The notes beneath the pieces are model-generated. The model did no database searches and was not told where the DNA came from. It saw nothing but the letters and a program-made list of their open reading frames with translations. The position numbers and the translations under genes are program-made. This document shows, piece by piece, positions 32,594 to 33,065 of a stretch of DNA of 64,000 bases (position 1 is the stretch's first letter; the number at the start of each line of letters is the position of its first letter). Location: assembly GCF_006345805.1 (NCBI RefSeq), contig NC_043007.1, positions 36,766,001-36,830,000 of the forward strand, in the 5' to 3' direction. The DNA comes from Octopus sinensis (lineage: Eukaryota).

Positions 32594-33065
32594 GGATTTG
32601 AAACTCGAGGGACAGAAATAAGCAACAGAGTCATTGCCTTTGGTAATCTGCAGACTGCTAGTGAGACTTCCCTGTCACTGGCACCTTCTTTGGACAGGGA
32701 CAAATTCAGATTTGGTGTACAGAGCAAACCTTCGAGAAAGAAGAACAGCAAGGCCAAAAAGCATCGGAAGAATAACAAAAGCAAGAAGAAGAAGAAGAAG
32801 AGGAAAAAGAAGAAAAAGAAGAAAAAACGGAACAGAAACAAGAAGAGGAAGAGGAAGAAGAAAAAGAACAGCATGAATAACAGCAGCAGCAGCAGCAGCA
32901 ACAATAACAACAAGAAAATGAAGAGGAAAAGAATGAGAAAAAACAAAGGCAAAAGTGAAAAAGCAAGGATGAGAAAGCAGAGCAGGAAACAGCAAAAGAG
33001 AAGGAGAAATAAAATACGTCAACAGCTTCAGAATGTTACAACTGGTTACTTCTGTGATGATCTTG
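32594..33065 (+). CDS. disp: Dispatched exon: start of ECD1 with polybasic insertion
   Basis: Pyrimidine tract + cag acceptor (phase 0), cttg|gtaagt donor (phase 1); GFETRGTEISNRVIAFGNL (cf. GFEPRGTAIGQRL..W) and GYFCDDL (cf. FFCDVP). Confidence 0.9.

What the first reader, a model, noticed from the sequence alone, without database searches (positions are those of the whole stretch)
32726..33019. Highly polybasic ~98-aa insertion in the furin-cleavage loop of Dispatched
Between conserved GFETRGT..NL and YFCD, where vertebrate DISP1 has a much shorter loop with an R-x-K-R furin site whose cleavage is needed for Hedgehog release, this exon encodes 58 K/R and a single acidic residue in 98 aa, split by an S/N linker. 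I find no strict R-x-x-R, only KRKR/KRRR clusters. The triplet-repeat-rich DNA stays in frame across 472 nt, which argues for selection. Inference: an extracellular polycation that could bind heparan sulfate or anionic lipid, compete with Hedgehog's own basic patch, or be released by convertases as a cationic peptide, i.e. a lineage-specific control of Hedgehog export.
Basis: partly seen in the sequence, partly recalled or inferred. Interest (0 to 1): 0.75.

Follow-up and report, generated by a model that had tools for sequence, protein, structure and literature searches.

The report
Expanded polybasic cleavage loop in octopus Dispatched
The octopus version of Dispatched, the membrane protein that releases the Hedgehog signal, carries a real but probably unstructured 98-residue lysine/arginine-rich stretch in the outside loop where proteases cut the vertebrate and fly proteins. 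It is a repeat-driven, lineage-variable enlargement of a basic loop shared by all sampled cephalopods, and similar basic patches occur in other invertebrates.

Summary
Window 32726-33019 encodes 98 aa with 41 K, 17 R, one E and no R-x-x-R. It lies inside a 472-nt exon (32594-33065) of a Dispatched gene. The joined exons match Octopus sinensis XP_029643031.2 exactly, so the gene and this exon are already annotated.

The tract sits in the "C-loop" of extracellular domain 1. Mouse and fly Disp are cut there by furin-type convertases.

It is not a free-standing octopus invention:
- All sampled cephalopods have a strongly basic C-loop (net +29 to +59).
- Spliced cuttlefish mRNAs retain it.
- Two decapodiform lineages keep its length and about 72% of its sequence.
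- Dense K/R patches also occur at a similar place in limpet, abalone, dipteran and tick Disp.

What is specific to octopods is length instability driven by (AAG)n and (CAG)n slippage. O. vulgaris differs by +9 and -3 nt, the O. bimaculoides model is 44 aa shorter, and the Argonauta loop is about 373 aa.

My best reading is a disordered polycationic linker (pLDDT <50) holding many redundant convertase motifs. Its last motif, KRRR, lies where the mouse and fly sites lie. Heparan-sulfate binding is plausible but untested. I obtained no octopus transcript evidence. This is a new variant of a known kind, of moderate-to-low interest.

The parts
29447..29457 (+). End of exon 1 of the Dispatched gene: start codon plus MAN and two bases of Cys (ATGGCCAACTG|gtaaaa).
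   Evidence: The pattern was found. With it the joined exons give MANCYSRLL..., the N-terminus of P0093/XP_029643031.2.
30881..31004 (+). Exon 2 (124 nt), encoding TM1 and the start of extracellular domain 1 (YSRLLVHHPYAVLTMITVFGTAALLISCFFSKGFDFEQPRA).
   Evidence: Splice sites were read. The segment aligns to DISP1 TM1 in PDB chains. The AlphaFold model has a helix at residues 9-30.
32594..33065 (+). Exon 3 (472 nt), running from GFETRGT through the C-loop to YFCDDL. It contains the whole finding.
   Evidence: The homologous exon is a single block in Sepia pharaonis genomic DNA versus mRNA (322 nt). It is a single open frame in Argonauta.
32726..32866 (+). Basic block I (47 aa, KPSRKK...KRKRKKKK), including a run of 16 consecutive K/R. 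It is encoded largely by an imperfect (GAA/AAG)n microsatellite.
   Evidence: TRF reports period 3, 34 copies, at 32767-32868. O. vulgaris has three extra AAG here.
32867..32911 (+). S/N linker (NSMNNSSSSSSNNNN) encoded by (CAG/AGC)n and AAC/AAT. It contains two N-x-S sequons.
   Evidence: TRF reports (CAG)6.7 at 32881-32900. Sequons are listed. O. vulgaris has one CAG fewer.
32912..33019 (+). Basic block II (36 aa, KKMKRKRMRKNKGKSEKARMRKQSRKQQKRRRNKIR). This is the less repetitive part and it is shared with the O. bimaculoides model.
   Evidence: AlphaFold predicts a low-confidence helix from partial-protein residue 162 onward (pLDDT 54-65).
32996..33007 (+). KRRR, the most C-terminal basic cluster, 13 residues before YFCD. 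It is the best candidate for the counterpart of the mouse R279|E280 and fly R237 convertase sites.
   Evidence: HMMER aligns QKRRRN with mouse ERERRE. Fly HRR lies six residues before FFCD. KRRR is conserved in O. vulgaris and O. bimaculoides. Cleavage itself is inferred, not shown.
34904..37518 (+). Last exon (2615 nt including the stop): the rest of ECD1, the sterol-sensing domain, ECD2, TM7-12 and the C-terminal tail.
   Evidence: Pfam Sterol-sensing and Patched hits. The region is 1.19% diverged from O. vulgaris with no indels.

Best explanation
The tract is the translated, intrinsically disordered middle of the Dispatched 'C-loop'. This is the extracellular linker between the first strand of ECD1 and the rest of ECD1, which convertases cut in mouse and fly.

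Cephalopods as a group have a strongly polybasic version of this linker. In octopods its core has become an (AAG)n/(CAG)n microsatellite that expands and contracts in units of three. That gives 98 aa here, 100 aa in O. vulgaris, about 54 aa in the O. bimaculoides model, and a far larger N/S/T-rich loop in Argonauta.

Proposed mechanism (inferred):
1. The tract offers many redundant (K/R)-x-(K/R)-R and dibasic convertase motifs.
2. The last of these, QQKRRR|N, sits at the position of the mouse and fly sites.
3. Disp is therefore clipped in this loop, which in vertebrates removes a steric block and lets the two ectodomain halves open for Hedgehog.
4. Because the linker is disordered and is severed anyway, its exact length is nearly neutral, which is why slippage is tolerated.
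5. Its basic character is kept, most likely for cleavage and possibly for binding polyanions such as heparan-sulfate chains of glypicans.
For: Shown:
- Gene identity and loop position.
- Exact identity to the annotated O. sinensis protein.
- Canonical splice sites, with conserved flanks in one frame.
- No internal in-frame GT..AG pair with a pyrimidine tract. Candidates score 0.5 or less, against 0.80-0.85 at the real acceptors.
- The exon stays open in O. vulgaris and Argonauta.
- Tract indels between O. sinensis and O. vulgaris are +9 and -3 nt, located at the microsatellites. Substitution divergence is 2.06%, against 1.19% in the last exon and 3.3-5.0% in introns, whose indels are mostly not multiples of three.
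- Cuttlefish mRNA contigs from three sequencing runs are spliced and retain the whole homologous exon.
- In the cuttlefish loop 8 of 15 Arg codons are CGN, so the loop is not just a repeat there.
- Two decapodiform proteins that are 80% identical overall keep the loop gap-free and about 72% identical.
- Net loop charge is +29 to +59 in cephalopods and about 0 in vertebrates.
- AlphaFold gives pLDDT <50 and no secondary structure for residues 81-161 of an otherwise confident model (mean 81.6, pTM 0.79).

From the literature:
- Mouse Disp is cut at R279|E280 by furin. Fly Disp has three redundant motifs, and only deleting 206-238 blocks cleavage (PMC5811216).
- The uncleaved human C-loop is unstructured and sterically blocks Shh, and the fly C-loop is 'greatly expanded' (PMC8630017).
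- The fly loop E90-S247 is unresolved in cryo-EM (PMC7159904).
Against: - No strict furin consensus (R-x-x-R or R-x-K/R-R) exists anywhere in the tract. P4 is always Lys, which furin disfavours (established knowledge of convertase specificity). Cleavage may therefore be inefficient, or done by another convertase.
- In fly, the polybasic patch (about residues 103-123) lies roughly 100 residues upstream of the mapped cleavage region 206-238. Basic patch and cleavage site need not be the same thing.
- I obtained no octopus transcript or protein evidence. Both extra homologue searches returned nothing, and the Logan octopod contig I checked is genomic.
- Near-neutrality of length is inferred from variation among only three or four species. 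One of these (O. bimaculoides) is a gene model I could not check against DNA.
Confidence: 0.62

Rival explanations
1. The polycation is a functional polyanion-binding arm. After or without cleavage, it stays tethered next to the Hedgehog-binding cleft and binds heparan-sulfate chains (for example of a glypican) or anionic lipid. It thereby recruits HS-bound Hedgehog or displaces HS from it.
For: - In the mouse ShhN:DISP1 complex, the linker arm just before the furin site wraps ShhN at its polybasic GAG-binding region. R276 shares a sulfate ion with Shh basic residues (bioRxiv 10.1101/2020.09.05.284026). The homologous segment is therefore at the right place.
- Fly Disp co-immunoprecipitates with the glypican Dlp (reviewed in PMC10930589).
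- Basic character is conserved across cephalopods with non-repeat codons in cuttlefish.
- Dense K/R patches recur in gastropod, dipteran and tick Disp.
- Net charge is +57 with one acidic residue.
Against: - There is no binding data for any Disp C-loop.
- Strict Cardin-Weintraub patterns occur only once each, although any polycation of this density binds heparin non-specifically.
- Large length differences between close relatives argue against a tuned binding module.
- Many molluscs (bivalves, caenogastropods, several heterobranchs) lack a basic patch.
Confidence: 0.3
2. The octopod-specific extra length is selectively neutral low-complexity drift. A microsatellite happens to sit in a tolerant disordered loop, and its K/R reading is simply what the AAG/AGA frame encodes.
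For: - Imperfect (GAA)34 and (CAG)6.7 arrays.
- Indels fall exactly at the arrays.
- Three nonsynonymous and three synonymous differences in the tract between two sister species, read off the alignment, with a higher substitution rate than the rest of the CDS.
- Argonauta filled the same loop with roughly 250 aa of N/S/T/I repeats.
- Neighbouring intron DNA is full of triplet microsatellites.
Against: - It does not explain why the ancestral loop is basic in all cephalopods, nor why it is length- and sequence-conserved in decapodiforms.
- The tract diverges more slowly than the introns.
- The other two frames have four to five stops within the tract, by my count on the translations, so the K/R frame is the maintained one.
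Confidence: 0.45
3. The tract acts on translation rather than on the mature protein. A run of 16 to about 30 consecutive basic residues slows or stalls ribosomes and lowers Disp output.
For: There are 16 consecutive K/R, and 29 of 31 basic residues in the core. Polybasic nascent chains are known to slow elongation (established knowledge of ribosome quality control).
Against: - There is no poly(A) track (11 or more A in 12 nt). The longest A run is 6, and AAG is preferred over AAA by 25 to 16.
- There is no expression data.
- The loop is basic but non-repetitive in decapodiforms.
Confidence: 0.07
4. The tract, or most of it, is not in the mature mRNA. It would be an internal intron ('exitron') or an annotation read-through.
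For: The O. bimaculoides RefSeq model lacks exactly 44 aa of the core. I obtained no octopus transcript.
Against: - The boundaries of the 44-aa difference are AAG|AGG...AGA|ATG, not GT..AG.
- No internal in-frame GT..AG pair has a pyrimidine tract.
- Independent O. sinensis and O. vulgaris annotations both include the tract.
- Cuttlefish mRNAs retain the homologous exon whole.
Confidence: 0.06

Closest known systems
Vertebrate DISP1 C-loop / furin-cleaved linker (mouse RERR 276-279, cut at R279|E280)
   Same: Both occupy the same position: after TM1 and the GFE.RGT strand, and before FFCD/YFCD in ECD1. Both are unstructured. Both have a basic cluster 10-13 residues before the conserved Cys (PMC5811216, PMC8630017).
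   Different: The vertebrate loop is 63-64 aa, has net charge about 0 and carries one strict R-x-K/R-R. The octopus loop is 146 aa, has net charge +57, no R-x-x-R and many K-x-K/R-R motifs. The vertebrate arm before the site is mixed or acidic and contacts Shh's basic patch. The octopus arm is itself polybasic.
Drosophila Dispatched expanded C-loop (E90-S247) with three redundant convertase motifs
   Same: Both are expanded, unresolved or disordered loops with multiple basic motifs. The fly loop also has a dense K/R patch, HRRRKNKHKNRNKNKRRK (PMC5811216, PMC7159904, PMC8630017).
   Different: The fly loop has about as many acidic as basic residues; related Diptera are net +4 to +12. Its K/R patch is about 20 aa and lies roughly 100 residues upstream of the mapped cleavage region. 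The octopus tract is continuous up to the presumed site and is microsatellite-encoded.
Decapodiform cephalopod Dispatched loop (Sepia pharaonis CAE1268962.1 and Logan mRNA contigs)
   Same: It is orthologous, with the same four-exon structure, and strongly basic (net about +30). It is shown to be in mature mRNA.
   Different: It is 50 aa shorter, has no S/N linker, uses mixed codons rather than a microsatellite, contains R-x-x-R motifs, and is stable in length between lineages.
Coding trinucleotide-repeat (homopolymer/low-complexity) expansions in disordered protein regions
   Same: Both show period-3 arrays, in-frame slippage indels between sister species, and a faster substitution rate than the flanking CDS.
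   Different: Here the expansion sits in a loop with a known regulatory cleavage function. It amplifies a pre-existing, conserved charge property rather than creating a new one.

Membership tests
Dispatched (Patched/NPC1-related RND-type SSD transporters) | Full-length similarity to Dispatched that is stronger than to Patched or NPC1. | tested here: met
   PDB DISP1 chains score E 1e-220 to 1e-212, fly Disp 5e-183, and PTCH1/NPC1L1 only 1e-12 to 1e-7. Top database hits are all named dispatched.
Dispatched (Patched/NPC1-related RND-type SSD transporters) | A sterol-sensing domain and two large extracellular domains after TM1 and TM7. | tested here: met
   Pfam Sterol-sensing 2.7e-16 and Patched SSD 7.8e-16. 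The AlphaFold model has pTM 0.79 with TM helices and two ectodomains.
Dispatched (Patched/NPC1-related RND-type SSD transporters) | Conserved acidic residues of the TM4 and TM10 cation sites (GxxxDD / GxxxD). | tested here: met
   VGIGADDTFIY and AIGMSIDFTLHY are present in the translation. D459 and D931 are invariant, and D460 is conserved in 90% or more, of 42 Disp sequences. The role of these residues is taken from bioRxiv 10.1101/2020.09.05.284026.
Convertase-cleaved Disp C-loop | Flexible linker in ECD1 between the GFE.RGT strand and the FFCD motif. | tested here: met
   Alignment to mouse and human DISP1 and fly Disp. pLDDT is below 50 for residues 81-161.
Convertase-cleaved Disp C-loop | Strict furin consensus R-x-K/R-R (or minimal R-x-x-R) in the loop. 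| tested here: not met
   There are zero R..R matches in the tract and in the whole loop. Only K-x-K/R-R (six) and dibasic [KR]R (nine) motifs are present.
Convertase-cleaved Disp C-loop | General proprotein-convertase motif (K/R)-Xn-(K/R)|, with n = 0, 2, 4 or 6, near the position of the mouse and fly sites. | tested here: met
   QQKRRR|N lies 13 residues before YFCD and aligns with mouse ERERR|E and with fly HRR|Q. The motif definition comes from established knowledge.
Convertase-cleaved Disp C-loop | Actual proteolytic processing into N- and C-terminal fragments. | not testable with these tools
   This needs western blotting or Edman sequencing of tagged octopus Disp.
Heparin/HS-binding basic motifs (Cardin-Weintraub) | XBBXBX or XBBBXXBX patterns. 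| tested here: inconclusive
   With strict non-basic X there is one match each (MRKNKG, SRKKNSKA). With any residue as X there are 28 and 21. The charge density is ample, but the pattern has no discriminating power in a polycation.
Poly(A)-track translational attenuators | At least 11 A in any 12-nt window. | tested here: not met
   No such window exists. The longest A run is 6.

The most novel reading that the evidence does not exclude
Cephalopods may have inverted the electrostatics of the Disp 'linker arm'. In vertebrates a mixed or acidic arm embraces Hedgehog's basic GAG-binding face and displaces heparan sulfate. In cephalopods a +30 to +57 arm would instead capture heparan-sulfate chains itself, or bridge to Hedgehog through them. 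Glypican/HS would then be an obligate partner of Hedgehog release. In octopods the arm's microsatellite core would give heritable, rapidly evolving variation in release efficiency.
Probability: 0.12. Interest if true: 0.7.

Novelty: new variant of a known kind. Interest (0 to 1): 0.35.

Why it matters
Disp cleavage in this loop is an essential activation step in mouse and fly. The segment just before the cut touches Hedgehog in the mouse complex. Three questions remain open: why invertebrate Disp loops are expanded, which acceptor or co-factor they use in the absence of Scube2, and whether heparan-sulfate proteoglycans act directly on Disp.

A natural series of orthologous loops now exists. 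It runs from neutral (vertebrates), through a 20-aa K/R patch (flies, limpets), to +30 (squid and cuttlefish), +57 (octopus), and a loop of about 370 aa (Argonauta). This series offers ready-made variants for testing what charge and length do to cleavage and release.

Taken alone, the octopus tract is an annotated low-complexity expansion, so the immediate significance is modest.

Tried and rejected
1. Two further protein-database searches were meant to find octopus transcript-derived fragments spanning the loop. One used the N-terminal 327 aa with the tract, the other 236 aa with the tract deleted. Both returned no hit, not even the known orthologues. This route to RNA evidence failed for technical reasons and says nothing about expression.

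2. Logan octopod contigs from the same 90% cluster (P0094-P0097) were candidate transcripts. I checked only P0094: its contig L010 has intron sequence upstream of the last exon, so it is genomic.

3. I tried to fetch O. bimaculoides DNA to decide whether its 44-aa-shorter loop is real. The protein is not on record in the contig index, so this remains unresolved.

4. An internal intron that removes the tract was considered and rejected as unlikely. No in-frame GT..AG pair has a pyrimidine tract.

5. A poly(A)-track attenuator was rejected.

6. I considered a fold search of the model and dropped it, because the sequence matches to solved DISP1 structures are already unambiguous.

7. I could not check whether cephalopod Hedgehog keeps its basic GAG-binding patch.

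Full report
**What is there**

The window is octopus genomic DNA. On the + strand it carries a four-exon Dispatched gene:
- the start codon at 29447 (ATGGCCAACTG|gt);
- exon 2 at 30881-31004;
- exon 3 at 32594-33065;
- a last exon at 34904-37518.

The joined translation of exons 2-4 (1069 aa) is an exact substring of Octopus sinensis XP_029643031.2, 'protein dispatched homolog 1-like', 1073 aa. The window is therefore O. sinensis, and the gene and this exon are already in RefSeq.

Identity as Dispatched is unambiguous. Solved DISP1 structures match at E 1e-220, fly Disp at 5e-183, and PTCH1/NPC1L1 only at 1e-12 to 1e-7. Pfam finds the sterol-sensing and Patched SSD domains. The TM4 GIGADD and TM10 GMSID acidic residues are present, with D459 and D931 invariant among 42 homologues.

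**The observation**

- 32726-33019 encodes 98 aa with 41 K, 17 R, one E and no D.
- Two basic blocks are separated by NSMNNSSSSSSNNNN.
- There is no R-x-x-R, but there are six (K/R)-x-(K/R)-R motifs and nine (K/R)-R motifs.
- The exon is 472 nt with canonical splice sites.
- K+R is 59% in the tract against 7.2% in the rest of the protein.

The DNA is an imperfect (GAA/AAG)34 array at 32767-32868, followed by (CAG)6.7 at 32881-32900. Lys is AAG 25 and AAA 16. Arg is AGA/AGG 14 and CGN 3.

**Where it sits in the protein**

The tract lies between the GFETRGT strand that follows TM1 and the conserved YFCD of extracellular domain 1. HMMER aligns ...QQKRRRNKIRQQLQNVTTGYFCD with mouse ...HHERERREVDWNFQ--KDSFFCD.

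This is the linker that holds the essential furin site of mouse Disp: RERR 276-279, cut at R279|E280 (PMC5811216; bioRxiv 10.1101/2020.09.05.284026). In human DISP1 it is the unstructured 'C-loop' 263-285, and its uncleaved form sterically blocks Shh binding (PMC8630017).

An AlphaFold model built on 42 homologues is confident overall (mean pLDDT 81.6, pTM 0.79). It gives pLDDT <50 and no secondary structure for residues 81-161, which covers most of the tract (residues 86-183). Residues 162-193 form only a low-confidence helix.

The vertebrate loop is indeed much shorter: 63-64 aa against 146 aa between the invariant T and C.

**Is it an octopus-specific insertion? No; only its size is.**

Cephalopods:
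- O. vulgaris has the same tract with +9 nt, (AAG)3, and -3 nt, (CAG)1.
- The O. bimaculoides model lacks 44 aa of the repeat core. The boundaries are not GT..AG, and I could not fetch its DNA.
- Argonauta hians has a loop of about 373 aa in one open exon. It contains basic clusters plus roughly 250 aa of N/S/T/I repeats.
- Decapodiforms have a 96-aa loop with net charge about +30.

Cuttlefish transcript evidence. For Sepia pharaonis, the genomic locus has four blocks separated by introns. Contigs assembled from three independent sequencing runs carry the uninterrupted 1116-aa ORF, so they are spliced mRNAs. They retain the whole 322-nt homologue of exon 3.

Evidence of selection in decapodiforms. 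In the cuttlefish loop 8 of 15 Arg codons are CGN, so the basic residues are not a by-product of a purine repeat. Two decapodiform proteins that are 80% identical overall align through the loop without a gap, at about 72% identity. The basic loop is therefore an old cephalopod character under selection.

Outside cephalopods, dense K/R patches (11-14 of 20 residues) occur shortly after the conserved L.P motif in:
- Haliotis, Lottia and Patella;
- mosquitoes and other Diptera;
- a bee and a tick.

Bivalves, caenogastropods, nemerteans, hemichordates, crustaceans and vertebrates lack them.

D. melanogaster Disp has HRRRKNKHKNRNKNKRRK at about residues 103-123. This lies inside the E90-S247 loop that is unresolved by cryo-EM (PMC7159904). 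Others have already called that loop 'greatly expanded' (PMC8630017).

**How it evolves**

Between O. sinensis and O. vulgaris:

| Region | Substitution divergence | Indels |
|---|---|---|
| Tract | 2.06% | two, +9 and -3 nt, both in frame |
| Last exon | 1.19% | none |
| 5' part of exon 3 | 0.76% | none |
| Flanking introns | 3.3-5.0% | mostly not multiples of three |

Reading the alignment, three of the six tract substitutions are nonsynonymous (K>R, N>D, M>T).

This pattern fits weak sequence constraint with retained composition, and length change by replication slippage. The better arguments are:
- conserved flanks in the same exon and frame;
- the other two frames are closed by 4-5 stops within the tract (my count on the translations);
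- the cross-species and mRNA evidence above.

**Most likely mechanism**

Shown:
- The tract is a coding, disordered, extracellular polycation in the loop that convertases cut in mouse and fly.
- Its last cluster, KRRR (32996-33007), lies 13 residues before YFCD. The mouse site lies 10 residues, and the fly R237 site 6 residues, before the same Cys motif.

Inferred:
- The loop is clipped by a furin-type convertase at one or several of its many (K/R)-x-(K/R)-R motifs. This parallels the fly protein, where three redundant motifs had to be deleted together to stop cleavage (PMC5811216).
- Cleavage relieves the steric and topological block described for human DISP1 (PMC8630017).
- Because the linker is disordered and severed, its length is nearly free to drift, while its basic character is kept.

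The main weakness is the complete absence of Arg at P4. A second weakness is that in fly the K/R patch lies about 100 residues from the mapped cleavage region. The patch may therefore have a separate role.

The most attractive separate role is polyanion binding. In the mouse ShhN:DISP1 complex, the arm just upstream of the cut embraces ShhN at its heparan-sulfate-binding face, and R276 shares a sulfate with Shh (bioRxiv 10.1101/2020.09.05.284026). Fly Disp also co-precipitates with the glypican Dlp (PMC10930589). A +57 arm cannot hug a basic surface directly, but it could hold or bridge through HS chains. Nothing here tests that.

**Novelty and score**

The gene model is known. An expanded, unstructured invertebrate C-loop with multiple convertase motifs is known from fly. 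I found no paper on cephalopod Dispatched.

What is new:
- the polybasic character of the loop is a conserved cephalopod trait, with scattered counterparts in other protostomes;
- octopods have turned its core into an unstable coding microsatellite.

This is a new variant of a known kind. It is a useful natural series for testing what loop charge and length do, but it does not overturn current understanding. No octopus RNA or protein evidence was obtained, and every functional statement beyond location and composition is inference.

Noticed in passing
window 42439-42690 (+): This ORF (…ERFIWWHQSSILRGKEQQGVLKPHGK…LQPPHGTE) nearly matches (one residue differs) the C-terminal tail of an annotated O. 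vulgaris Disp isoform (CAI9730477.1, 997 aa). That isoform leaves the last exon after ...VITVAI and so loses TM11-12. The isoform is probably a non-functional or artefactual splice into repeat-derived sequence about 5 kb downstream of the gene.
   Followed up: partly
window 33167-33271 (+), intron just after the exon: (TCC)n, (TCA)n and (CCT)n triplet microsatellites start about 100 nt after the donor site. They differ by 12- and 40-nt indels from O. vulgaris. Triplet-repeat instability is thus a local property of this region, not only of the exon.
   Followed up: partly
window 3464-3700 (-) and 13770-14168 (-): Two fragments carry the Mos1/mariner transposase HTH_48 domain (E 5e-18 and 3e-11). 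They are decayed mariner-type DNA transposons upstream of the gene.
   Followed up: partly
window 49831-50373 (-); 60938-61291, 61570-61809 and 62454-62807 (+): Two reverse-transcriptase fragments were found (RVT_1, E about 1e-16 each). Upstream of the second lie a DUF7083 ORF and a CCHC-like ORF. Together these look like remains of an LTR-type retroelement downstream of the gene.
   Followed up: partly
many sites, e.g. window 4147-4356, 6479-6742, 8248-8508, 9070-9428, 30299-30550, 33337-33612: A short interspersed repeat recurs on both strands, including in the introns flanking the exon. Its translation reads ...FLQLDALPNANHSE.... Very abundant (TA)n/(TG)n-type dinucleotide arrays are also present ([12 protein letters not shown] ORFs).
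   Followed up: no
(tool behaviour): Two protein-database searches with N-terminal fragments of the same protein found nothing, not even the orthologues recovered with the full-length query. Negative results from that tool with short or low-complexity queries should not be read as absence.
   Followed up: no
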